Shown one piece after another: positions 6,540-34,845 of a stretch of DNA of 64,000 nucleotides. The translations under genes and the position numbers were made by a program. The notes beneath the pieces are model-generated. The model saw only the letters and a list, made by a program, of their open reading frames with translations. It ran no database searches and was not told the DNA's origin. Location: IMG/VR virus record IMGVR_UViG_3300027770_000026, positions 62,001 through 126,000 of that record; one strand, given 5' to 3'. The stretch's first letter is position 1. Each line of letters opens with the position of its first letter.

Positions 6540-8681
6540 ATGAAAATACATGATATACTCACCGAAGCACAGCGTTTTGACTTCGACAAACACCGTGATA
6601 CTATTCTGCGTTTTGTGCAAAATACGCTGGCCGGCAAGCCCAATAACAGACAATTCAATCCCTTTTATGAACTGATTGTGGGTGGCGGGCAAGTGGGTGC
6701 CGCAAACAAATTGGGTATTGATCCCAAGATGGCAGCAACATGGAAACAGTACTTCCAAAGCAAGCCCTTCCTAGGTGGAGCCGGTGAACCTTGGAGTCAG
6801 GTTAACATTGGTGATCAGTACGCTAAGGCCACAGGCGATGACCGAACCCTGAACTTTTATGTTACTGTAAGCAAAGACAAGGACAATATAATGAAGTTCT
6901 TTAGGAACTATCACAGCCTTGCTAGCTACTTACAGCCCATAAGTCAACAGAACCAAACGCCTATCAAGTTTAAAACACACAGTATATTAGACAGCTTTAT
7001 TGGGCACAACGACAGTTTCAAGGTCTACTACTACGATCCTAAACTACGGAACCAAATAGTTGCTGCTGTTAAGAAATGGCTCAGTGACAGTGGTGTAAGC
7101 ACTGCTGCAAGATCACACGAACACGGCGTGGACGTAAAGAGTAATGGTGGTAGCTTTGGACAGTTACTAAGCAATCACGTATACGACGAGTTCACCAAAC
7201 TGATAAAAACAAACGGCGCTAAGGTTACTCCTGAACAGTACTTTGACTGGCTTAAGAAGAATCTCCCTGTGTTAATAGCACAGGTAAAGCCTAAGGAGCA
7301 AATGACAGAATCCTGGAGCAAGGGCTACAAGAAGAGCATTGATTGCTCAAATCCAAAAGGGTTTGGTATGAGAGCCAGCGAATTTATAACTGAAACACCA
7401 CTTGATCCTAGCACATCAAGTAAAATACTAGCTATGGCAACACGGCAAAAATACCAACTGCTGGGACAAGGCGCTGATGCTACTGTATTTGGTAGCTCTA
7501 CTCACCGTCCAAAAACGGTAGTTAAGATAACGTCGGGCGAACTATACACATCTGCAAAAAAAGCCAGCATAGGTTTCGACCACTTTTACGAGTTTTGCCA
7601 ACAGCACCCCGATAGCCCCTACCTGCCAAAGTTTGAGGAACGGGGATTCTTTGAAGTAAACAGGGAAAAGATTCCTTGGGTGCGTATGGAGCGTTTGAAC
7701 GAACATCCACAGGATTTGCATATCTATGCTGCTGTAGATACGCTAATAGAGGAATCATTTAAAAACGAATTTGCTGATTGGAAACTTGTGAAGTCTCTGC
7801 ATCCAAAATTGACCCTACAACAGCTGGGGATGCTTAAGAAATTTTACTCCATGCTCTCGGAACTAACAGACTACTTTTGGAAAAAAAGATCCAAATTGAA
7901 GTGGGATCTAGGAAAACGTAATATTATGTACCGTAGTAACGTTCCTGTTATCACAGATCCGTTCATGGCTAAAGAGCGAGAAGAATATGAAGAATCCTGG
8001 AGTAAGAGCTACAAGAAGAGCATTGATTGCTCAAATCCAAAAGGGTTTAGTCAACGTGCTCACTGTGCGGGACGCAAAGCACGACGTGCGGGCAAGAAGA
8101 CCAAAAGCGGTAGCGTAAGTGAAGAAGGAGAACTACTTTGGTCGTCAATGAATGAAGCTAGAGCCAATAGTGTGGAAGATTACAAGCCCACTGACCAACA
8201 ATTAGATGACCTAAAAAGCAAGTATCTTCCCAATTGGGAAATGTCAGATCATAAAATGTTACAGGCACGCTACATAGCCAAAGATCATCGACGTGCTGAA
8301 AAATTTATCAGGTTCATAAACCAAGTATCCGAACGTATGGATCACTTTGCCAAAGTAACTCAGGATGTATCCGAAGTCACTGTGGAAACAACTACCTTTG
8401 ATGTAAAAGGTCTGACTATTTTGGACTTCCAGTTGGCCTCGGCCATAGACAAATATGCAGAAAGAAATCAAATTGAACAGGCGAGGTCAGGCGGTAATTT
8501 TGAAATGTATGAAAACTTTGCAGATGGCGAGAAGCCTGGTCGCAAAGGACTAGCCAAACGTTCAGGTGTTGACTGTAAGCAAAGTGTGAGTAAATTGCGT
8601 AGTGTTGCTAAGAATAGCACAGGTGAAAAGCAGCGTATAGCACATTGGTGTGCCAATATGAAATCAGGGAAGAAAAAATAA
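6540..8681 (+). CDS. capsid-targeted polyprotein: HopA1-like domain, Ser/Thr kinase-like domain, pterin-carbinolamine-dehydratase-like domain and Cys/basic peptide modules
   Basis: TATAAATA at 6527-6534 then ATG 6540 (MKIHDILTE); kinase LGQGADATVF/VVKI/DLGKRNIM/TDP; PCD-like LPNW...MDHF...GLTILDFQLA; modules separated by xxE sites. Confidence 0.8.
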   Translation: MKIHDILTEAQRFDFDKHRDTILRFVQNTLAGKPNNRQFNPFYELIVGGGQVGAANKLGIDPKMAATWKQYFQSKPFLGGAGEPWSQVNIGDQYAKATGDDRTLNFYVTVSKDKDNIMKFFRNYHSLASYLQPISQQNQTPIKFKTHSILDSFIGHNDSFKVYYYDPKLRNQIVAAVKKWLSDSGVSTAARSHEHGVDVKSNGGSFGQLLSNHVYDEFTKLIKTNGAKVTPEQYFDWLKKNLPVLIAQVKPKEQMTESWSKGYKKSIDCSNPKGFGMRASEFITETPLDPSTSSKILAMATRQKYQLLGQGADATVFGSSTHRPKTVVKITSGELYTSAKKASIGFDHFYEFCQQHPDSPYLPKFEERGFFEVNREKIPWVRMERLNEHPQDLHIYAAVDTLIEESFKNEFADWKLVKSLHPKLTLQQLGMLKKFYSMLSELTDYFWKKRSKLKWDLGKRNIMYRSNVPVITDPFMAKEREEYEESWSKSYKKSIDCSNPKGFSQRAHCAGRKARRAGKKTKSGSVSEEGELLWSSMNEARANSVEDYKPTDQQLDDLKSKYLPNWEMSDHKMLQARYIAKDHRRAEKFIRFINQVSERMDHFAKVTQDVSEVTVETTTFDVKGLTILDFQLASAIDKYAERNQIEQARSGGNFEMYENFADGEKPGRKGLAKRSGVDCKQSVSKLRSVAKNSTGEKQRIAHWCANMKSGKKK
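7307..7364 (+). repeat. 58-bp direct repeat, copy 1
   Basis: 56/58 identical to 7991-8048; encodes ESWSKxYKKSIDCSNPKGF. Confidence 0.95.
7991..8048 (+). repeat. 58-bp direct repeat, copy 2
   Basis: 56/58 identical to 7307-7364. Confidence 0.95.
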
Positions 8682-8978
8682 GAGGGTTTTTCTGTTGCCA
8701 GGAAAACCCACAAACCCCGGTCTATTCCGCTATTAGGCGGCTAGTGCCATGTCGTAATTGCTATCGTTTGCAGTTACTGTTTTTGCGCTGATTAAGTCAG
8801 TCGCCTCACTGGTAGCCCTTAGTTTATTACTCACCCTGTCAAACCTGGTCGGCCCCAACAACAACACACTTCGTCCTGCAGTACATTCCTAATAGGTGTG
8901 ACACGGTCTGCAAATGTGCTGTTGGTGGAGCCGGGGGGAATCGCACCCCCGTCCAAGATGCCTTTAGTTAAGAGTTTA
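8682..8978 (-). ncRNA. ssrA: circularly permuted two-piece tmRNA
   Basis: Acceptor piece about 8978-8923 ends CGGCTCCACCA; self-pairing intervening segment 8922-8857; coding piece starts GGGGCCG at 8856 (G3.U70 pair); tag GCA(8771)..TAA(8733) = ANDSNYDMALAA; 3' CTG-GCAA-CAG hairpin; TATAAT at 8989-8984. Confidence 0.93.
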
Positions 8979-8996
8979 CTACCATTATACACTTAC

Positions 8997-9746
8997 TTAT
9001 AGTTTTTGATCATATGGTACTTCAATCCATCTACGATTATTCCACGTTGTATTGATAGTATGCACAACACCTTTCCTTATATCATGATAAAACAGTCTTG
9101 CTTGTGTTTGTGATGTGATGCTATCAACTAATGCCCAAAAACTGCTCGACACACAATGTATTTCTGTTGCGTTTCTGATCAGAGTAACCCACTTTAACAA
9201 GTTACCCTGATCTAGATCCAAAGTAACATAGATTATTTTGATATTAGGTAACCCGTTCACAACACGATATTGTTCAATGTCAATTGGAAAGCCATCTAGG
9301 TAATGACTGGATGATTTATGAATCAATACATATGGTTCTCCGGGGGTAACTAACGAACAGTACAGTTCATCCGAATCATCAATATGTTTTGGTAAACGAA
9401 AATTAGTATATCTCAAAGAGAAAGGCAAGTTATAAGAATCATAATATTGCTGAGAGAAATTAATTGGGATATGAATTCCGTTTATAACTGTGTAATTAAG
9501 CATCCTTCTCTTAATTTGAGAAAGTCCGCTATCTGATATGTATTGAGGTTCATAATTTGGGTGTACAGATACTACCTTAATATTAGGCCAATCTTGATAC
9601 AGACAACGAGTAGTTTCATAATAGCAAGGTTGAGTCGGAATATGTAATTCTCGACACCGATCGCCATAGTAATGAGCTATACCATTGTGAATAAAAGTAT
9701 CACCGAGGCTTTGATAACCTATAAAGAACAAACGATCAAATATCAC
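8997..9746 (-). CDS. glycosyltransferase-like protein, paralog 2
   Basis: SLGD..I.NG N-terminal motif and A.EIHCVSSSF C-terminal motif, GT-B (GT9/GT11-like) pattern; paralog of next gene. Confidence 0.6.
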   Translation of the reverse strand: MIFDRLFFIGYQSLGDTFIHNGIAHYYGDRCRELHIPTQPCYYETTRCLYQDWPNIKVVSVHPNYEPQYISDSGLSQIKRRMLNYTVINGIHIPINFSQQYYDSYNLPFSLRYTNFRLPKHIDDSDELYCSLVTPGEPYVLIHKSSSHYLDGFPIDIEQYRVVNGLPNIKIIYVTLDLDQGNLLKWVTLIRNATEIHCVSSSFWALVDSITSQTQARLFYHDIRKGVVHTINTTWNNRRWIEVPYDQKL

Positions 9747-16540: not shown

Positions 16541-16843
16541 TCAGGCTGGTTTAACTTTTACTTCTAATGGATAACCGTTGCGCCGGGCAGCATAAGTGCA
16601 TTCCAACGCTCGCTGTTCTGCCAACTCGTAGTGATAAGTGGCAACAACAGCCTGACCCTGCTCATGGACCAGCATCATGATTTCAAAGCTGCGGGTATTA
16701 TCATATTCAAAAATCTCAGCCAACAATTGAATAACAAAGTCCATACTGGTTACATTGTCATTCATAAAAATCACATTAAACTTTTTGGGTTCTTCTGTTG
16801 TGATGCTATTTTTGATTTTGGGTTTTACTGCAACTTCTGTCAT
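16541..16843 (-). CDS. clpS: ATP-dependent Clp protease adaptor ClpS
   Basis: F.VIF.ND..TSMDFV...IMM.VH..G.AVV...E.AE...GYPL. Confidence 0.92.
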   Translation of the reverse strand: MTEVAVKPKIKNSITTEEPKKFNVIFMNDNVTSMDFVIQLLAEIFEYDNTRSFEIMMLVHEQGQAVVATYHYELAEQRALECTYAARRNGYPLEVKVKPA

Positions 16844-16858
16844 AATGCTATCCTTTTA

Positions 16859-17284
16859 TTAGCTGCGCTTGATTTCGATCTTGCGTGGCTTGAGCTCTTC
16901 TGGTACCTTCTTGACTAATTGTACAGTCAACAGGCCGTTTTTGCAAGTGGCAGATTCAACTTCCACATGCTCACCGAGACGCCAATTCAATTCAAAGTCT
17001 CGATTAGCAATGCCCTTGTACACATAGTCACGTGGCTCTTCATCCGGTACTCGTGAGCCAGTAACGTGCAGCACGTTATTGTCCACAGTAACTTCAATAT
17101 CGTCCGGAGAGAAGCCAGCAACTGCAACAGTGATGCTCCAGGTATTGTCTTCGAGTCGTTCGATATTGTATGGTGGATACTTGGCCTGAGGTAAACCGTT
17201 TCGTCCCATAAGGTCATTGAGATATTCAAACCCTACGGTTAAACGGTTCAGATGGTCGTTGAGATTTGTAGTTGTTACATTCAT
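16859..17284 (-). CDS. small heat shock protein Hsp20 (IbpA-like)
   Basis: YPPYNI, AVAGF, YKGIA.R.F, NGLL motifs. Confidence 0.95.
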   Translation of the reverse strand: MNVTTTNLNDHLNRLTVGFEYLNDLMGRNGLPQAKYPPYNIERLEDNTWSITVAVAGFSPDDIEVTVDNNVLHVTGSRVPDEEPRDYVYKGIANRDFELNWRLGEHVEVESATCKNGLLTVQLVKKVPEELKPRKIEIKRS

Positions 17285-17368
17285 TTTATTGCTCCTTTAA
17301 AAGCGAGTTGTATGGAACCCCAATTGGGCGTTCCTTGTAGTACGCACACCATGTGCCTACTACAATTT
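17285..17368 (-). promoter_or_regulatory. ROSE-like RNA thermometer in the hsp20 leader
   Basis: Two hairpins followed by CTCGCT-TTTAA-AGGAG, pairing U(U/C)GCU with the SD. Confidence 0.65.
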
Positions 17369-17399
17369 TATTTATACACGAACTATCGAGTCAAGTCAA
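17369..17399 (-). promoter_or_regulatory. overlapping late (TATAAATA) and sigma70-like promoter
   Basis: TTGACT-17nt-TATAAA(TA). Confidence 0.6.
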
Positions 17400-17617
17400 G
17401 TTTTAATTTTTTGCTCGCGACGAGTGCGGGCGACAGCTTTGGCTTTAGCACGGCGTGCAACAATGCTGGGCTTGAGGTATTCACGCTTCTTGTCCAGATC
17501 GTCCAAACGTCCACTGTTCTCTACTTTCTTTTTGAACTTGCGCAGCATCTTCTCAAAACTATCGCTGCCGTTATCGTCTACACGTAGACCTTTGATAATT
17601 GGTTCTTTATGTCTCAT
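17396..17617 (-). CDS. rpsU: 30S ribosomal protein bS21
   Basis: FEKMLRKFKKKVENSG.L....KREYLKPS..RR. Confidence 0.88.
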   Translation of the reverse strand: MRHKEPIIKGLRVDDNGSDSFEKMLRKFKKKVENSGRLDDLDKKREYLKPSIVARRAKAKAVARTRREQKIKT

Positions 17618-18861
17618 TATACACCTTTTTTCTTTTGCTTGTGCTTTATCAAAGGCATTTCTTCTGTACCGTTGATATACTCTTTAGTTATCGTTACTGT
17701 GCTTACTGTTTGTAAATTCTTATGGCTAAGACTGTACTGCAACGGTGTTAACTTCTTCTCTAATATACTGCGCAAACTACGTGCGCCTGTTCCCTGCTTG
17801 ATAGCTTTTTGTGCAATACTACTCAGTGCTTCCGGTGCAAACTTTAATTTTACGGGAGAGAACATAGCTTCATACTGTTTGATGATACTGTCTTTTGGTT
17901 CCGTAAGGATCTTGACCATTTGTTCTTCTGTTAGCATTTCAGTGGAAGTGATAACCGGCAAGCGTCCCATTAGTTCTGGGATCATACCATACTTTACCAA
18001 ATCTGTTGCAGCCAATAAGTCCCAATTAATTTTCTTGTTAGATGTTACATTAGCAGAAAATCCAATACCAGTGCTAGTGGACTGTTGCTGCTCTAGATGT
18101 TTCTCTAGTCCAACAAATGCTCCACTACACACAAAGAGGATATTACTAGTGTCCATCTTAACAGTATCACCTAGTCCAAATGGCTTATCTGGATCTGTGG
18201 GTACACTGATCTCGCAGCCTTCGATCATTTTTAGTAGTGCTTGCTGCACACCTTCGCCCGACACATCTCGTTCTACCGTAGCACCACTGTGTGCCCGTGC
18301 GATCTTGTCAATCTCGTCAATAAAGATTATACCTTGTTCAGCTAGTTGTACATTACCATTAGCTGCTTGCAGCAATCTACTTAGGAGTACATCTGCATCG
18401 TCACCTGCATAACCTGCTTGAGTCAGTGCAGTAGCGTCTCCGATTATCATTGGTACACTTAGCAAGTTAGCAATGGCTTTGACCATTAGAGTTTTACCCG
18501 AACCAGTTGGTCCAAGTAACAAGATGTTGCTCTTATCTACTCGTACACTTTCTTTGTCTGCTTTACGGAACAATCGTTTGTAATGATTGTGTACAGCAAC
18601 ACTAAGGACTACCTTAGCTTTATCCTGACCAATTACAATTGTATCAAGATATTCTTTAATCTCAATCGGTGTTATTATTTTAGGTTTAGTTTTAGGTTGG
18701 GGCGTTTTGACTTCGGGTACTTTTTTAACTAATAGGTCTACTATAGACTGTACACATATGTTGCAGATACCCGCTGTTTCACCAACAATCAGACGCTCAA
18801 CTTCTGCCTGAGTTCGCTGACAAAAACTACAGTGCTTTACCGTATTTTTTTTGGATTGCAT
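17617..18861 (-). CDS. clpX: ClpX AAA+ unfoldase
   Basis: C4 zinc finger (CSFC...CNIC), [36 protein letters not shown] loop, GARSLRSI. Confidence 0.96.
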
Positions 18862-19222
18862 TATTCACCAGTAAGTTAATGTTTTCTTCTACAATGTGTC
18901 GTAATGACAACTTGTACAATGTATTTAAGCTCGCGCTGTCATATTCCATGTAATAGCAATTTGGCAGCGATAGTATGTAGCCTGTTAACCAGTGAAACAA
19001 GTTTGGGTTGTTAAATATTATTAGATTGCTTGTTTCTAGCACTGCTAGAACATACTCAATGTCGTTAGTTTGTGGGGATAGATCGTATAACGCAATGTTA
19101 CCGTCTATTTCAACTTCATTGAGTAATGTTGTAACTTTTTCCTGAACTTCTGAATCTAGGCCGATAACCGTTACTTTGAAACCGGTGTATGTAATATCAG
19201 GTGATGTTAACAGACTGATCAT
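18827..19222 (-). CDS. hypothetical protein
   Basis: ORF track; overlaps neighbours. Confidence 0.65.
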
Positions 19223-20495
19223 TGTCTAGGTATTTAAGAATGGCGGCACACTGCACCCAACTTAGTTCGTCAACGGTCATGTTATTGTTAGTAAGTTGAT
19301 CCATTAGATTACGCACAGTTTCTAAACTAATTAGTTCAGGCTTCTCCCTCAAAGAGTCAAGAGAAATAATTTTACCATCAAACCTTACGTAGTCGGGACC
19401 AATCTGTTGATAACGATTTGAGATTAGTTCTCTTGTATTATCCGGTGTCTCTTCTACCGGTGCTTCAACTATAACCCAATTACGTTTTGCTGAATCCCAT
19501 GTCATACTTCCGGGTGTGCTGCTAACAGTGTCATAATTGAATACTTCAGCATGTGGCGGTAATTCGTCGATAAGTGGTGTCGAAGCTACCTCATCTGGTA
19601 CAATCTCAAGATCTGCAGGAGTTGAATCAATTTCTAATTCTATCGGAACTACCACTTCCTCTGCTTTAACTTCCGGCACAGGTTCAACTACTGCAACAGG
19701 TGCAGGTGGTTCTACTGGAAGGATGGGATCGACTGCAGTTTTTGCTGCCTGTTCCTTACGGTGCAGTGCCATGCCAAAGTTAGCAGCAATAAGCATGATA
19801 ACTGCTAGTGGGTCAAACACCACAATAAGGATAATGATTACTGAACGCACTGCTTGGTCAAAGTGACTCTTAGCTTGTTCGCCGTAGATTAGTTCTGCAA
19901 TATACTTTAGCGGGCCAATCTCCGCTTCTACTTTGCGATTGCTAATATCCAGCGGAATCTTTTCTTCGTATAACTTGTCAATGTCTGTTTGTAATGCTTT
20001 CTTTTCGTTTGCAACACCACGAAGCTCGCGTTTCATTCGATCACGCTGTGCCAATGCTTGGCTTACACGATCCTTTTCAATTAGCGCGTCAACTGCATGG
20101 TTGAGACGGTCTTCGGTACCAGTTAGTCTTTCCAGCTGCTTTTCCTTAACAGCAATGTCTTGCTCCATACGTTCCAACTGCAAGCTAGTGTCCGATGTTG
20201 CAGCACGTTGTTCCAAGTGTGCTTTTGATAGATAACCAAAGATTCCCATGCTGGTAATGAACATGAGCACAACTACTGCTGCACTCATATAGGCTTTCAG
20301 CGCACGTGGTGCAGCGATCCAATTGTTATACACCCAACTGGCGCAAACTAACTTGGCTACTTCCAATGTACCGCCCATGATCATGATGCTGATTGGGGCA
20401 GCAGAGAAGATAGCAATAAGTCCTGCAACAGAGAACCAAGCTGCAACGCCACTAAGGGCAAGTCCAGTTAAAAGCATTAGAATTGTAGCAAACAT
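19197..20495 (-). CDS. multi-TM coiled-coil membrane protein
   Basis: Three N-terminal TMs, ITSMGIFGYLS, coiled coil, EIGPLKYIA, VFDPLAV; TAAATA 7 nt before ATG. Confidence 0.8.
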   Translation of the reverse strand: MFATILMLLTGLALSGVAAWFSVAGLIAIFSAAPISIMIMGGTLEVAKLVCASWVYNNWIAAPRALKAYMSAAVVVLMFITSMGIFGYLSKAHLEQRAATSDTSLQLERMEQDIAVKEKQLERLTGTEDRLNHAVDALIEKDRVSQALAQRDRMKRELRGVANEKKALQTDIDKLYEEKIPLDISNRKVEAEIGPLKYIAELIYGEQAKSHFDQAVRSVIIILIVVFDPLAVIMLIAANFGMALHRKEQAAKTAVDPILPVEPPAPVAVVEPVPEVKAEEVVVPIELEIDSTPADLEIVPDEVASTPLIDELPPHAEVFNYDTVSSTPGSMTWDSAKRNWVIVEAPVEETPDNTRELISNRYQQIGPDYVRFDGKIISLDSLREKPELISLETVRNLMDQLTNNNMTVDELSWVQCAAILKYLDNDQSVNIT

Positions 20496-22891: not shown

Positions 22892-25306
22892 TTACTGGCA
22901 GCTTTCGCACACCTCATCTGCCTCTACTTTTGCAGCAGTTGTAGTGCTGTTTTCAGTAGATGTCAGCTTGTTAATGTTGGTTGCTGCCTTGCTGCGTAGG
23001 TAGTAAGTAGTTTTGACCCCGTTTTCCCAAGCATACATGTACATTGCACTCAATTTTTCAATTTCCGGGGTAGTCATAAACAGGTTTAGACTAGCAGCCT
23101 GGTCAATAAATCGACCACGTGCCACTGCCAAATCAATTAGGGCCCGCTGCTTAATTTCCCAAACAGTCTTGTAGATATTCTTGATATTGTCGGGAATGCT
23201 TGCGATATCCTGAACACTACCATTGGCTGCTTTGATCTGATTCATCATGTCCGGGTTCCACAAACCTAATGCTGTAAGGTCGGCGACCAAGTACTTGTTA
23301 ATAGTGATAAATTCACCGCTCAACGTTTCGCGTTTAAAAAGGTTGCTAATCTGCGGCTCAGTGCATTCATAAGCACCACAGATACCACTAATAGTTGCGG
23401 TAGGTGCAACAGCAATAAGCAAACTATTGCGTAATCCATGTTGTTTAATTTCTTCCTTTAGTTCAATCCATCTCTTATCTTGATTGAGATGATCAGCGCC
23501 GCCTGCTAGATCAAACTGTAGTTTACCCTGTGCAGCATGTGTATGTTCAAAGTCACGATGTGCGCCGTGCTTCTTGGCTAGTTCGCAAGATGTTTTGAGC
23601 GCAACGTAATAAATCTCTTCTTGTATCTTGGCTGCAAGTTCATGTGCAGTCTGGCTTTCAAATCCCAACTTGAGTTGGAACAACATGTCCTGCCACCCCA
23701 TTAAGCCCAGTCCAACTGGACGCCAATGGTTGTTGCTGTTCTTAGCTTCGGGCACTGGATAGAAGTTCTTGTCAATGACACGGTCTAGGAACTTGACAGC
23801 CACTGCTATATTCTTGCGCAGCTTCTTGTAATCAACCTTGCCGTCGTGTGTAACATACTTGGCTAGGTTAATGCTGCCTAGATTGCATACTGCGATCTCG
23901 CCGCTTTCCATTACTTCCAATTCATCAGTCATGGGATTGTAGCCAATCACACGAGCATTGTTAGCATGCTCTGGCAGGAAGTCTTCGCGTTTGACACGAG
24001 TACGCCGGCCAGCAAAGGTTGGCTCGATAATTTCAGTACATAGGTTACTATTACGAACAACATGTCCATTTACTGCACTGTTGCAACGCTTGTTACTGGT
24101 GTCCTTCCAAGTCATCCAACCATTGCCAGTTTCAGCAAGTGTACGCATCATACGAGCATAAACCTTACGTGCTGGCAACTGCTTGACGTATTCCCCAGCT
24201 TCTTCTAGACGCTGATATTCTGTATCAAAGTCTTCGCCAAACAGGTCAAGTAATTGTGGATGCAGGCTGGGTTCAAACAAACTCCACACGCTATCTTCCC
24301 TGAGACGCTTCATAAACAAATCTGGAATCCAGTTAGCTAGATTTAGATTGTAGGCGCGCTTCTCTCTGTCACCAGTGTTGTCACGCAGTTCCAAGAACTC
24401 CATGATGTCCGGATGCCATGTTTCCAAGTATACGCAAGCACTGCCCTTGCGCTTGCCACCTTGATTAACTGCTGCTACGTTTGAACTTAGGCTGTGCAGG
24501 AATGGAATGATACCATTGCTCTTACCGTTAGTGCCCTTGATCAGTGCGCCACTGCCACGTACACGGCTGTAGTTAAGACCAATGCCGCCTGCCCACTTAC
24601 TGAGCTGTGCAATGTCTGCGTGACGCTTTTCAATATCTTCCAGCTCGTCTAGCGGACTATCCAGCAAGTAGCAACTGCTCATCTGACTATGCTGCGTACC
24701 ACTGTTGAACAGCGTTGGCGTGCTAGTCATATATTCGAGACTGCTGAGCAGGTTGTAGAGTTCAACGGCCTCATCAACCGACTCAGCAAGACCGCAACTT
24801 ACTCGCATTAGAAAGTACTGAGGTGTTTCCAACACCAGTCGGCGTGTTGGATGCTTCAGCAAGTAGCGGTCATAAACTGTTCTGATACCGTAATATTCAA
24901 ACAAGTCATTACGTTCAGGCTTTACTGCGTGATTTAATTTACGCTTGTTAGATTGTACAAACTCTTGTACTGTCTTGTCAATAAGGCCAGCCGTAAAACA
25001 TGCGTCTACACTCTGACTAAAACTTTCTACATCCTGGCCACTTACTTCCTTGTCGATGTAGCGGCTTAGTAGGCGCGCAGCAACACGACTGTATTCAGGG
25101 CTTTCTGCAATAAATCCCACTGCAGTTTGAATGCTGAGTAGGTCTAGTTCAGTAGTTGGTACACCATCATACAAACCTCCTACAGTCTTAGTTGCAATCT
25201 TGTAGGGATCAATATCTACTAAACCATCACTCACAAAGCCTAGTGCTCGTGTAATCTTTTCCAAATTAACTTCTTCTAATGCGCCGGAACGCTTGCGTAC
25301 TTTCAT
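22892..25306 (-). CDS. nrdA: ribonucleotide reductase class Ia alpha subunit
   Basis: ATP cone, TPTLFNSG, SSCYL, SNLCTEI, VCNLGS, APTA, KTTYYLR, C-terminal CESC. Confidence 0.98.
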   Translation of the reverse strand: MKVRKRSGALEEVNLEKITRALGFVSDGLVDIDPYKIATKTVGGLYDGVPTTELDLLSIQTAVGFIAESPEYSRVAARLLSRYIDKEVSGQDVESFSQSVDACFTAGLIDKTVQEFVQSNKRKLNHAVKPERNDLFEYYGIRTVYDRYLLKHPTRRLVLETPQYFLMRVSCGLAESVDEAVELYNLLSSLEYMTSTPTLFNSGTQHSQMSSCYLLDSPLDELEDIEKRHADIAQLSKWAGGIGLNYSRVRGSGALIKGTNGKSNGIIPFLHSLSSNVAAVNQGGKRKGSACVYLETWHPDIMEFLELRDNTGDREKRAYNLNLANWIPDLFMKRLREDSVWSLFEPSLHPQLLDLFGEDFDTEYQRLEEAGEYVKQLPARKVYARMMRTLAETGNGWMTWKDTSNKRCNSAVNGHVVRNSNLCTEIIEPTFAGRRTRVKREDFLPEHANNARVIGYNPMTDELEVMESGEIAVCNLGSINLAKYVTHDGKVDYKKLRKNIAVAVKFLDRVIDKNFYPVPEAKNSNNHWRPVGLGLMGWQDMLFQLKLGFESQTAHELAAKIQEEIYYVALKTSCELAKKHGAHRDFEHTHAAQGKLQFDLAGGADHLNQDKRWIELKEEIKQHGLRNSLLIAVAPTATISGICGAYECTEPQISNLFKRETLSGEFITINKYLVADLTALGLWNPDMMNQIKAANGSVQDIASIPDNIKNIYKTVWEIKQRALIDLAVARGRFIDQAASLNLFMTTPEIEKLSAMYMYAWENGVKTTYYLRSKAATNINKLTSTENSTTTAAKVEADEVCESCQ

Positions 25307-33593: not shown

Positions 33594-34757
33594 TTAGGCG
33601 TTCTCGACTTGTACGCTGGTGTTGAGTACAGCAGCAGTTAATTTCCAAGGAACTGTAACTCCGCTTGCAAACTCATATGCTGCACCATTAATAGCCTTGC
33701 GTGTCAATAGCGCACGGTGAGCTGTTAGTTTGGTTACATAATATTCGTTTGTGTCGCTGTCAACTGCAACAATAGTTGCTTCACCAGCAGCCGGACCTGC
33801 AGCTACTAGCTTGACTTGGCTTTGGCCTTGTGCAGTGTCTACTAGATAACGACGGCTTGCTTCCTGCTTGATGATATCACCAGCTACTGCTGAACTTCCG
33901 CCAACGACCCATGCAGTGATCTTGATAGCATTTGCCTTAGTTGAAGTTAGTGTGATAGTCTGTAGTGTTACGCTTTGTGTAACGCTTGAACTTGGAGCAG
34001 TATAATAACCTGCACCAGCAGTTGTGATCACTACTGACTTAGCACGATATGTTGGCGTAATTGTTAGACCAGCACCGTATGTATCACATACAGCAGCTTG
34101 TGCACCTGTTACTAGTGCTTCAAATTCGCCACGGTTAACTGGGGTCAGTGCCGTGACTGTGCCGTATGTTACACCGCGTGTGAATGTTGCACCTGTTACA
34201 GTTGAACCACCAATTGCTAGTGGACTGGTTGCAGCTACTGCATCAGCATAGGTAGCATACAGTGTTGCAGCAGTTGCTGTTGTTGGTGCTCCAACGTAGT
34301 AAATCTGTCCGCCAGCAATAGTTGTACCACCAATGGTCAAGTTACCAGTAACTGTTCCAGTAATGTGAATACTGGTACCAGAAATCATTGCAGTTGTAGT
34401 GGTGGTGAAGCTGATCTGAGTGTTAGCAGAGTTAGCTATGCTTGATAGTGCGCTGGATGTTACAGTTGCAGTGTATGTTGATGTTGTTGTACCACCAACA
34501 AAACTGATTGCACCTGCTGTAATAGGATAAGCACGAGTCTGTGTGCCACCAATCGCAACACTTAACACTTCTGATGTGATAGTACCTAGTGCTAGTACAC
34601 CACCTGACGCTACTGGAACGTCAGGGTTACCAAATGTGATCAACGGACGAGTGGTGTATGAACCTGCAGCATTAACTGCTGCGCTTGCTACACCTTCACC
34701 ACCTACTGGTGGGCTGTTTGTATTACCAAAATATTTCTTATGAATCGGGCGTCCCAT
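33594..34757 (-). CDS. virion structural protein (Thr/Ala/Gly-rich)
   Basis: MGRPIHKKYFG start, beta-rich, IIKQEASRRYLV; own late promoter and terminator. Confidence 0.75.
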   Translation of the reverse strand: MGRPIHKKYFGNTNSPPVGGEGVASAAVNAAGSYTTRPLITFGNPDVPVASGGVLALGTITSEVLSVAIGGTQTRAYPITAGAISFVGGTTTSTYTATVTSSALSSIANSANTQISFTTTTTAMISGTSIHITGTVTGNLTIGGTTIAGGQIYYVGAPTTATAATLYATYADAVAATSPLAIGGSTVTGATFTRGVTYGTVTALTPVNRGEFEALVTGAQAAVCDTYGAGLTITPTYRAKSVVITTAGAGYYTAPSSSVTQSVTLQTITLTSTKANAIKITAWVVGGSSAVAGDIIKQEASRRYLVDTAQGQSQVKLVAAGPAAGEATIVAVDSDTNEYYVTKLTAHRALLTRKAINGAAYEFASGVTVPWKLTAAVLNTSVQVENA

Positions 34758-34845
34758 TTTGTTTCTCCTTAAGTGAGTTAAAGTCGTTCTAGGACTTACG
34801 CGGTGGGGACCGCATAACTCTGTTATTGAACAGACAATGTATTTA
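34758..34845 (-). promoter_or_regulatory. late promoter and three-hairpin 5' leader
   Basis: TAAATA 34845-34840; hairpins TCTGTT/AACAGA, TATGCGGT/ACCGCGTA, AGTC/GACT; AAGGAG. Confidence 0.55.

What the first reader, a model, noticed from the sequence alone, without database searches (positions are those of the whole stretch)
17617..18861. Phage ClpX has all three ssrA-tag-reading loops rewritten
Seen: pore-1 reads GYAG (canonical GYVG), pore-2 reads [11 protein letters not shown] (E. coli RKSDNPSITRD), and the RKH loop is replaced by PTDPDKPFG. Walker motifs, Zn finger and IGF loop are intact. Known: these loops determine ssrA-tag recognition. Inference: an unfoldase retargeted to other substrates, or one that sequesters ClpP away from tagged proteins, although the phage carries an LAA-tag tmRNA.
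Basis: partly seen in the sequence, partly recalled or inferred. Interest (0 to 1): 0.65.

Follow-up and report, generated by a model that had tools for sequence, protein, structure and literature searches.

The report
Phage ClpX with rewritten substrate-reading loops
A freshwater jumbo phage carries an intact ClpX protein-unfolding motor whose three loops that normally read the bacterial "degrade me" (ssrA) tag have been rewritten and then conserved, so the phage probably points the Clp protease at other targets.

Summary
Window 17617-18861 (-) encodes a 414-aa protein that passes NCBI's ClpX equivalog models. Its Zn finger, Walker A/B motifs, Arg finger, sensor-2 and IGF ClpP-docking loop are intact.

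Pore-1 is GYAG, pore-2 is [11 protein letters not shown], and the RKH hairpin reads [11 protein letters not shown]. Of six E. coli residues shown to set ssrA affinity, three are changed: V154A, T199E and H230F. One is conservative (R228K), and Y153 and V202 are kept. In 96 other ClpX proteins, V154, R228, K229 and H230 are invariant and position 199 is always T or S.

The change defines a monophyletic, metagenome-only phage clade of 24 proteins and arose in two steps. In the closest subclade the new loops are more conserved (94%) than the whole protein (82%), so they are selected, not decaying.

The gene lies in a ClpX-bS21-sHSP-ClpS cassette shared by many large phages, most of which keep canonical loops. 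The phage also has ClpA, a second ClpS and a permuted tmRNA with an ALAA tag. No ClpP is found in the 266-kb record, which is about 80% complete.

Retargeting is the best reading but is inferred. ClpP sequestration is untested. I rate this a new variant of a known kind, of moderate interest.

The parts
17617..18861 (-). clpX-like gene, 414 aa (P0001)
   Evidence: ORF. NCBIfam ClpX equivalogs are above cut-off. Pfam finds zf-C4_ClpX, AAA_2 and ClpB_D2-small. The best PDB sequence and fold matches are all ClpX.
18730..18837 (-). N-terminal C4 zinc-finger domain (C11, C14, C33, C36)
   Evidence: PF06689, E = 6e-11; translation.
18490..18513 (-). Walker A, GPTGSGKT
18403..18414 (-). Pore-1 loop GYAG (E. 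coli GYVG; V154->A)
   Evidence: Val is present in 96 of 96 other ClpX and 77 of 78 other viral ClpX.
18304..18330 (-). Walker [10 protein letters not shown]
18265..18297 (-). Pore-2 loop [11 protein letters not shown] (E. coli RKSDNPSITRD; T199->E, with R200 and D201 kept)
   Evidence: Glu at position 199 is found only in the 8-member subclade.
18169..18201 (-). RKH-loop equivalent [11 protein letters not shown] (E. coli PPQGGRKHPQQ; R228K, K229P, H230F). Net charge is -1 instead of +2.
   Evidence: The AF2 model keeps the beta-hairpin (strands 217-221 and 233-237).
18058..18066 (-). IGF ClpP-docking tripeptide
   Evidence: G267 and F268 are invariant in alignment A1. Weak support for docking on E. 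coli ClpP.
17396..17617 (-). Ribosomal protein bS21 gene. Its ATG overlaps the clpX stop codon (TAATG).
   Evidence: PF01165 and TIGR00030; sequence. Same position in relatives.
16859..17284 (-). IbpA-like small heat-shock protein (HSP20)
   Evidence: synteny.
16541..16843 (-). ClpS adaptor
   Evidence: PF02617, 84 bits; synteny.
18827..19222 (-). 131-aa protein of unknown function. It overlaps the clpX start and is conserved only in the 24-member clade.
19197..20495 (-). 432-aa membrane and coiled-coil protein, conserved upstream of clpX in nearly all virus-borne clpX loci
8642..9015 (-). Permuted (two-piece) tmRNA gene, tag ANDSNYDMALAA
   Evidence: ARAGORN. Rfam RF04321 scores 142 bits and RF01850 scores 124.5 bits. 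Sequence.

Best explanation
This is a working ClpX-family AAA+ unfoldase of a freshwater jumbo myovirus. The motor, the Zn-finger N-domain and the IGF ClpP-docking loop have been kept. The degron-reading surface at the top of the axial channel (pore-1 Val, pore-2 loop, RKH hairpin) has been re-specified.

The re-specification happened in two steps in a phage-only lineage. The first step changed H230 to Leu or Thr and diverged the pore-2 loop. The second step, in the query's subclade, added V154A/T, T199E and K229P and acidified the hairpin.

Shown: the sequence changes, their restriction to this phage clade, purifying selection on the new loops, and retention of the IGF loop.

Inferred: Thr199 donates the hydrogen bond to the ssrA alpha-carboxylate, His230 and Val154 contact the tag, and the positive RKH ring attracts it. 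The variant should therefore bind LAA-COO- (ssrA-type) degrons poorly and prefer another, unidentified set of degrons or substrate surfaces.

Also inferred: it most likely caps a ClpP ring. That ring would be the host's, because no phage clpP is seen. It would act within a phage proteostasis and takeover module (ClpX-bS21-sHSP-ClpS, plus ClpA and a second ClpS). ssrA-tagged products would be left to host ClpXP or to the phage ClpA.
For: Family membership and intact catalytic motifs.

Loop changes mapped without gaps to E. coli residues.

Experimental importance of those residues:
- Y153A, V154F and R228A raise KM at least 50-fold.
- T199A/V, V202A and H230A cause large KM increases, while T199S causes only about a 4-fold increase.
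- Human ClpX has Leu at positions 199 and 230 and does not degrade ssrA substrates (PMC7652416).
- Deleting the RKH loops or replacing them with alanine abolishes ssrA recognition, and the positive RKH ring disfavours positively charged substrates (preprint 10.64898/2026.07.31.739446).

Rarity: 0 of 96 other ClpX proteins change V154, R228, K229 or H230.

Concentration of change in the loops: odds ratio 9.8, p = 1e-5.

Phylogeny: the 24-member clade has SH-aLRT support of 100, with the query subclade nested in a grade that still has GYVG and Ser199.

Selection: identity within the subclade is 0.94 in pore-2 and 0.94 in the RKH hairpin, against 0.82 overall.

ClpP docking: IGF is retained (G267 and F268 invariant). 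In the ClpP docking prediction the partner scored 0.49 against a best control of 0.01 (verdict: weak support, possibly from memory of solved ClpXP complexes).

Phage context: the clade sits on phage contigs with a conserved cassette. No named cellular protein is more than 50% identical.

ClpP content: no ClpP, SspB or SmpB is found in the record.

Who could handle ssrA-tagged proteins instead: the phage ClpA has GYVG and an LGF docking loop, and the candidate host ClpX is canonical.

Expression hint: short contigs identical to clpX, sHSP and clpS are present in two lake metatranscriptome libraries.
Against: No biochemical data exist for this protein.
- V154A itself has not been tested in the papers I read.
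- R228K is conservative, and Y153, R200 and V202 are kept.
- Loop lengths are unchanged, so some ssrA binding could persist or be rebuilt by other contacts.
- The phage keeps an ALAA-tag tmRNA.
- The record is only about 80% complete, so a phage clpP could lie in the missing part. All 8 near-complete related phage records have one.
- The complex prediction is only weak support.
- Presence in RNA libraries is not proof of transcription.
- No candidate substrate emerged.
Confidence: 0.55

Rival explanations
1. The loops changed but ssrA reading is kept. The new loops would be a neutral or co-adapted solution that still recognises the ALAA-COO- end, perhaps tuned to the subclade's own tag (Y-DM-ALAA).
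For: The phage and its subclade relative keep tmRNAs whose tags end in ALAA and share a DM insertion. Y153, R200, V202 and a basic residue at position 228 are retained. Loop lengths are unchanged.
Against: T199E places a carboxylate where Thr hydrogen-bonds the tag's alpha-carboxylate, and T199A/V and H230A each cripple binding in E. coli. Three Gammaproteobacteria genomes have the same YDMALAA tag with fully canonical ClpX loops, so that tag does not require new loops. ALAA tags occur across the phage group regardless of loop state.
Confidence: 0.15
2. It is a ClpP-independent unfoldase or remodelling chaperone. The phage ClpX would work alone, as E. coli ClpX does on MuA, for example in virion assembly or in remodelling host complexes.
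For: No ClpP is found in 266 kb. The gene is co-located with an sHSP and translationally coupled to bS21. Jumbo-phage reviews propose chaperone or assembly roles for phage ClpX (PMC7824862).
Against: The IGF tripeptide is strictly kept across the clade, which is hard to explain without ClpP docking. The docking prediction gives weak support. The record is incomplete, and all near-complete relatives encode ClpP.
Confidence: 0.15
3. It is a ClpP sink or dominant-negative factor. The phage ClpX would occupy host ClpP, or mix into host ClpX hexamers, mainly to block host ClpXP degradation of phage proteins or of tagged proteins.
For: The IGF loop is kept while ssrA-reading residues are lost. No phage ClpP has been seen.
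Against: A pure blocker would not need intact Walker A/B motifs, Arg finger, sensor-2 and pore-1 Tyr, nor purifying selection on new pore loops. Nothing tested here speaks to competition.
Confidence: 0.1
4. It is a decaying or non-functional gene copy.
For: Long stem branch (0.67 substitutions per site).
Against: The reading frame is full length and all catalytic motifs are intact. There are 24 homologues with conserved synteny. The loops are more conserved than the rest of the protein within the subclade. The gene is present in RNA libraries.
Confidence: 0.03

Closest known systems
Bacterial ClpX (E. coli ClpX, UniProt P0A6H1; PDB 6wrf, 8e91)
   Same: About 46% identity over the full length. 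Same domain order: C4 Zn finger, then large and small AAA+ domains. Walker A/B, Arg finger, sensor-2, pore-1 Tyr and the IGF loop are shared. Loop lengths are the same.
   Different: GYVG becomes GYAG. Pore-2 RKSDNPSITRD becomes [11 protein letters not shown] (T199E). RKH becomes KPF, with an acidic hairpin. These are the residues that read the ssrA tag.
Human mitochondrial ClpX (CLPX)
   Same: It is a natural ClpX that keeps the motor and ClpP docking but has Leu at the positions of T199 and H230 (an RKL loop) and does not degrade ssrA substrates. The sister grade of the query clade has converged on RKL or KKL.
   Different: Human ClpX keeps GYVG and a basic RK pair. The query subclade goes further: GYAG, Glu199, KPF and net-negative loops. 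It is of phage, not eukaryotic, origin.
ClpX of other large phages (Bacillus phage G gp258, Agrobacterium phage Atu_ph07 gp2, Lak phages, IMG/VR mega-phages)
   Same: These are phage-borne clpX genes at 41-50% identity. In the IMG/VR loci the same membrane protein-ClpX-(bS21)-sHSP-ClpS block is found. Phage G ClpX and ClpP are made and found in particles (PMC12484599).
   Different: Most keep GYVG (77 of 78) and RKH (55 of 78). All 8 near-complete records carry their own clpP. A few other lineages changed the hairpin independently, by deletion or to RKN.
E. coli ClpX RKH and pore-2 specificity mutants (R228A, T199A/V, H230A; Farrell 2007 and Martin 2008 as cited in PMC7652416)
   Same: The same positions are altered. 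The laboratory mutants lose ssrA affinity, and R228A gains preference for an N-terminal degron.
   Different: The mutants are single engineered changes. Here a multi-residue natural solution has been fixed and conserved by selection.

Membership tests
ClpX (NCBIfam NF003745 / TIGR00382 equivalog) | Whole-protein HMM score above the curated cut-off | tested here: met
   482.5 bits against a cut-off of 359, and 447.6 bits against 370.75.
ClpX | N-terminal C4 zinc-binding domain | tested here: met
   PF06689, E = 6e-11. C11, C14, C33 and C36 are present.
ClpX | Single AAA+ module with Walker A, Walker B, Arg finger and sensor-2 | tested here: met
   [21 protein letters not shown] and GARSLR. The fold matches ClpX chains with TM-scores of 0.8-0.9 normalised to the target.
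ClpX | IGF loop for docking on ClpP | tested here: met
   IGF at residues 266-268. G and F are invariant in alignment A1. Actual binding is only weakly supported in silico (0.49 against a best control of 0.01).
ClpX | Pore-1 GYVG motif | tested here: not met
   GYAG. Val is present in 96 of 96 other ClpX proteins. The aromatic Tyr is kept.
ClpX | RKH motif in the channel-entry hairpin (said to be specific to the ClpX family) | tested here: not met
   KPF at the aligned positions. RKH is present in 96 of 96 other ClpX proteins.
ClpX | Pore-2 loop with Thr or Ser at position 199, which binds the degron carboxylate | tested here: not met
   Glu197. T or S is present in 96 of 96 other ClpX proteins.
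ClpX | ATP-dependent degradation of ssrA-tagged proteins with ClpP | not testable with these tools
   Needs a biochemical assay.
ClpXP protease encoded as a phage pair | A clpP gene in the same genome | tested here: inconclusive
   No PF00574 match in the 265,892-bp record, which is about 80% complete, nor in the 108-kb clade relative. All 8 near-complete related records have clpP.

The most novel reading that the evidence does not exclude
The acidified channel entrance (hairpin charge +2 to -1 per subunit, plus Glu199) would make this ClpX a specialist for basic proteins, which canonical ClpX unfolds poorly. The one-base overlap of its stop codon with the start of the very basic phage bS21 gene, conserved across the clade, would reflect a joint function. 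One possibility is pulling host bS21 or other basic ribosome- or nucleoid-bound proteins out of their complexes, so that phage versions can take over translation.
Probability: 0.06. Interest if true: 0.85.

Novelty: new variant of a known kind. Interest (0 to 1): 0.55.

Why it matters
ClpX is the textbook case of how an AAA+ protease chooses its substrates. The roles of pore-1, pore-2 and the RKH loops come mostly from engineered E. coli mutants and from the human enzyme.

This clade offers a natural series maintained by selection: canonical loops, then RKL- or KKL-type loops with Ser199, then GYAG with Glu199 and KPF. The whole series sits inside one syntenic phage cassette. It is a ready-made set for testing how specificity is re-coded without touching the motor.

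It would also show that large phages do more than bring extra Clp parts. They can change what the Clp protease sees during infection. Nothing here bears on harm. The host is an environmental freshwater bacterium.

Tried and rejected
- Near or distant DNA matches in GenBank phages found only short clpX-core matches at 65-69% identity, so there is no cultured relative.
- ClpP, SspB and SmpB were searched for in the record and none was found. The ENA contigs of relatives (331 kb and 142 kb) are not held whole, so ClpP absence could not be checked in a complete clade genome.
- I tried to show a precise clpP deletion by synteny with relatives that carry clpP 6-10 kb downstream. The flanks are too diverged to align.
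- Relatives cannot be drawn for a virus record.
- Host assignment is only suggestive. The tag AND(D/S)NYDMALAA occurs in three Gammaproteobacteria MAGs, one of them Halioglobus, but on one-piece tmRNAs. Rfam's betaproteobacterial two-piece tmRNA model (RF01850) also matches the phage tmRNA, and no psbA is present.
- C-termini of the phage's 311 ORFs: 5 end in AA against about 2 expected, which is uninformative about self-protection from ssrA-like recognition.
- The promoter and terminator scan found no enrichment over shuffles, so there is no operon boundary evidence.
- The AF2 monomer models the three loops and the IGF loop at pLDDT below 50, so no structural inference on the loops was drawn.
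- Complex prediction (phage ClpX residues 62-414 with two E. coli ClpP chains) gave a 'weak support' verdict: 0.49 against a best control of 0.01, runs agreeing in at least 75% of contacts, partner pLDDT 75. Solved ClpXP complexes exist, so the score may reflect memory. I use it only as a minor point.
- The pseudogene reading and the reading of a host-derived variant ClpX were both rejected.

No alternative genetic code was used.

Full report
WHAT IS THERE

Window 17617-18861 (-) is a 414-aa ORF. It passes both NCBI ClpX equivalog models: NF003745 at 482.5 bits (cut-off 359) and TIGR00382 at 447.6 bits (cut-off 370.75). Pfam finds zf-C4_ClpX, AAA_2 and the D2-small domain. The best PDB sequence matches are full-length ClpX proteins, with E = 4e-107 to E. 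coli ClpX 8e91. An AlphaFold2 model (pLDDT 77.5) matches only ClpX chains at the top of a PDB fold search.

Direct translation gives these motifs:
- Zn finger: 18730-18837
- Walker A GPTGSGKT: 18490-18513
- pore-1 GYAG: 18403-18414
- Walker [10 protein letters not shown]: 18304-18330
- pore-2 [11 protein letters not shown]: 18265-18297
- RKH-hairpin equivalent [11 protein letters not shown]: 18169-18201
- IGF: 18058-18066
- Arg finger and sensor-2 are present.

The window is bases 62001-126000 of a 265,892-bp IMG/VR virus record, estimated 80% complete. The record has tail sheath, baseplate wedge and hub, tape-measure and family-B DNA polymerase genes, so 'phage' is correct.

MAPPING TO THE E. 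COLI RESIDUES

The HMMER alignment to E. coli ClpX runs without gaps from Walker A to beyond the RKH hairpin. Phage position equals E. coli position minus 2. The mapping is Y153=Y151, V154->A152, T199->E197, R200=R198, V202=V200, R228->K226, K229->P227 and H230->F228.

Fei et al. 2020 (PMC7652416) report the following:
- Y153A, V154F and R228A raise KM for ssrA substrates at least 50-fold.
- T199A, T199V, V202A and H230A cause large KM increases.
- T199S costs only about 4-fold, because the Thr199 hydroxyl hydrogen-bonds the tag's alpha-carboxylate.
- Human ClpX has Leu at positions 199 and 230 and does not degrade ssrA substrates unless it is given the E. coli pore-2 and RKH loops.

A 2026 preprint adds two points. 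Deleting the RKH loops or substituting them with alanine abolishes ssrA recognition. The positive RKH ring also disfavours positively charged substrates.

In the phage protein the hairpin's net charge goes from +2 (plus His) to -1. Position 199 becomes Glu.

HOW UNUSUAL IT IS

A word-index search of 5.8 billion proteins returned 120 listed hits, which I aligned. In the 96 proteins outside the query's clade:
- Y153, V154, V202, R228, K229 and H230 are invariant.
- Position 199 is T in 90 and S in 6.
- These 96 include named Pasteurella, Haemophilus, Acinetobacter and Clostridia ClpX.

The query belongs to a group of 24 unnamed, metagenome-only proteins at 51-100% identity. This group forms one branch with SH-aLRT support of 100 and a stem of 0.67. 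It has three loop states:
- Subclade A (8 proteins, including the query): GYAG or GYTG, R[AS][18 protein letters not shown].
- A paraphyletic grade B (11 proteins): GYVG; Ser, Gly or Thr at position 199; KKL or RKL.
- Subclade C (5 proteins): GYVG; Ser or Gly at position 199; KKT or RKL/RRL.

The rewriting was therefore stepwise, and A is the most derived state. B converges on the human RKL.

The change is concentrated in the loops. At positions at least 90% conserved in the 96 others, A differs at 13 of 20 loop positions against 21 of 132 elsewhere (odds ratio 9.8, p = 1e-5).

Within A, the new pore-2 and hairpin sequences are 94% identical pairwise, against 82% for the whole protein. That is purifying selection on the new loops, not decay.

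Independent freshwater runs hold the loop-coding DNA with no differences.

CONTEXT

clpX is followed by three genes:
- A bS21 gene (17396-17617), whose ATG overlaps the clpX stop as TAATG.
- An IbpA-like sHSP gene (16859-17284).
- A clpS gene (16541-16843).

The same order is found in subclade A, grade B and subclade C contigs.

I ran tblastn of these neighbours against 80 IMG/VR clpX loci. The block of membrane protein, ClpX, bS21 (in about 30 loci), sHSP and ClpS (each in about 60 loci) is shared by nearly all virus-borne clpX loci. These include complete mega-phages of 416-578 kb.

Most of those phages keep canonical loops: V154 in 77 of 78 and RKH in 55 of 78. A few lineages independently deleted the hairpin or have RKN, and one (L058) has GYAG. 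The query is thus a derived state within an old phage module.

Elsewhere the genome has:
- A ClpA-like protein (739 aa; TIGR02639 at 759 bits, below cut-off) with a canonical D2 GYVG loop and an LGF docking loop.
- A second ClpS.
- 22 tRNAs.
- Heme oxygenase and a bilin reductase.

CLPP

No PF00574 match exists in the 266-kb record or in the 108-kb grade-B record. All 8 related records that are at least 90% complete have clpP, often 6-10 kb downstream of clpX.

Because about 20% of the genome is missing, absence is not proven.

IGF is strictly kept. A docking prediction of ClpX residues 62-414 on two E. coli ClpP chains scored 0.49 against a best control of 0.01. The verdict was 'weak support', the runs agreed in at least 75% of contacts, the partner pLDDT was 75, and the score may come from memory of solved ClpXP complexes. 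I read this as 'docks on ClpP, probably the host's', and mark it as inference.

tmRNA

The gene at 8642-9015 (-) is a permuted two-piece tmRNA. RF04321 scores 142 bits and RF01850 scores 124.5 bits.

Tags found in this phage group:
- Query: ANDSNYDMALAA.
- Subclade-A relative L085: ANDASYDMALAA.
- Grade-B record G001: a tag ending ANDSAYALAA.
- Three records with canonical ClpX loops also carry permuted tmRNAs, with tags that all end in ALAA.

The ALAA tag is therefore independent of the ClpX loop state.

The tag ANDDNYDMALAA occurs in three Gammaproteobacteria MAGs, one of them Halioglobus, on ordinary one-piece tmRNAs. Their ClpX loops are fully canonical. This weakly suggests the host group. 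It also shows that the YDMALAA tag does not require new loops.

The habitat is freshwater or lake water. Short contigs identical to clpS, sHSP and clpX occur in two lake metatranscriptome libraries. This is suggestive of expression, not proof.

INTERPRETATION

Shown:
- This is an intact ClpX orthologue with re-coded, selected substrate-contact loops.
- The change is restricted to a phage lineage.
- The gene sits inside a conserved proteostasis and translation cassette.

Inferred, at about 0.55 confidence:
- The protein has lost high-affinity reading of LAA-COO- degrons.
- It directs a ClpP ring, probably the host's, to other substrates.
- Tagged proteins are left to host ClpXP or phage ClpA.

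Rivals:
- ssrA reading retained (0.15).
- ClpP-independent remodeller (0.15).
- ClpP sink (0.10).
- Decay (0.03).

KNOWN VERSUS NEW

Already described:
- Phage clpX, clpP, clpA and clpS (PMC7824862; PMC6102473; PMC12484599).
- tmRNA and S21 in huge phages (PMC7162821).

Five literature searches found no paper that analyses the specificity loops of phage ClpX. That is absence from the held library only.

Verdict: a new variant of a known kind, of moderate interest.

Noticed in passing
window 8642-9038 (-); relatives L085:18569-18942, L107-L110: The phage tmRNA is a permuted two-piece type (RF04321 at 142 bits; RF01850 at 124.5 bits). Permuted tmRNAs with tags ending in ALAA recur across this group of large phages. 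ARAGORN misses four of them. The query's tag (YDMALAA) matches the one-piece tmRNA tags of three Gammaproteobacteria MAGs, one of them Halioglobus, which is a possible host clue.
   Followed up: partly
window 16541-20495 (-); 80 IMG/VR loci L005-L084: A block of membrane/coiled-coil protein, ClpX, bS21, sHSP and ClpS is syntenic in nearly all virus-borne clpX loci, from contigs of about 50 kb to complete 578-kb mega-phages. The clpX stop codon and the bS21 start codon overlap (TAATG at 17617).
   Followed up: partly
IMG/VR loci L039, L040, L047, L052, L057, L059, L061, L065, L067, L079; L058: Other phage ClpX lineages independently deleted about 7 residues of the RKH hairpin. Several of these have IGI instead of IGF. 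L058 has GYAG with shortened pore-2 and RKH loops. Specificity-loop remodelling therefore seems recurrent in phage ClpX.
   Followed up: partly
G000:C1:1550-3769 (-) (L004:109-2328), outside the window: A ClpA-like double-ring AAA+ protein of 739 aa, with a Clp_N domain, a canonical D2 GYVG loop and an LGF ClpP-docking loop. A second ClpS lies at G000:C1:53765-54004 (-).
   Followed up: partly
G000:C1:243230-244430 (+), outside the window: Adjacent heme oxygenase and ferredoxin-dependent bilin reductase genes (PF01126, PF05996). Grade-B relatives carry the pair just upstream of the clpX block. No psbA is present in the record.
   Followed up: partly
window 34755-34834 (-): Rfam 'freshwater-2' cis-regulatory RNA motif, 64.7 bits (gathering score 49.9).
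   Followed up: no
G000:C1:33072-61949 (-), outside and just before the window: A cluster of 22 tRNA genes covering most amino acids. Together with bS21 and the tmRNA, this gives the phage a sizeable translation toolkit.
   Followed up: no
G000:C1:174390-188798 (-) and 221728-229545 (+), outside the window: Giant ORFs of 4,802 and 2,605 aa. Neither was analysed.
   Followed up: no
window 22892-25306 (-): The class I ribonucleotide reductase large subunit is 79% identical to that of a grade-B relative. Relatives also carry the small-subunit gene between the large subunit and clpX. This DNA-metabolism block is conserved upstream of the clpX cassette.
   Followed up: no
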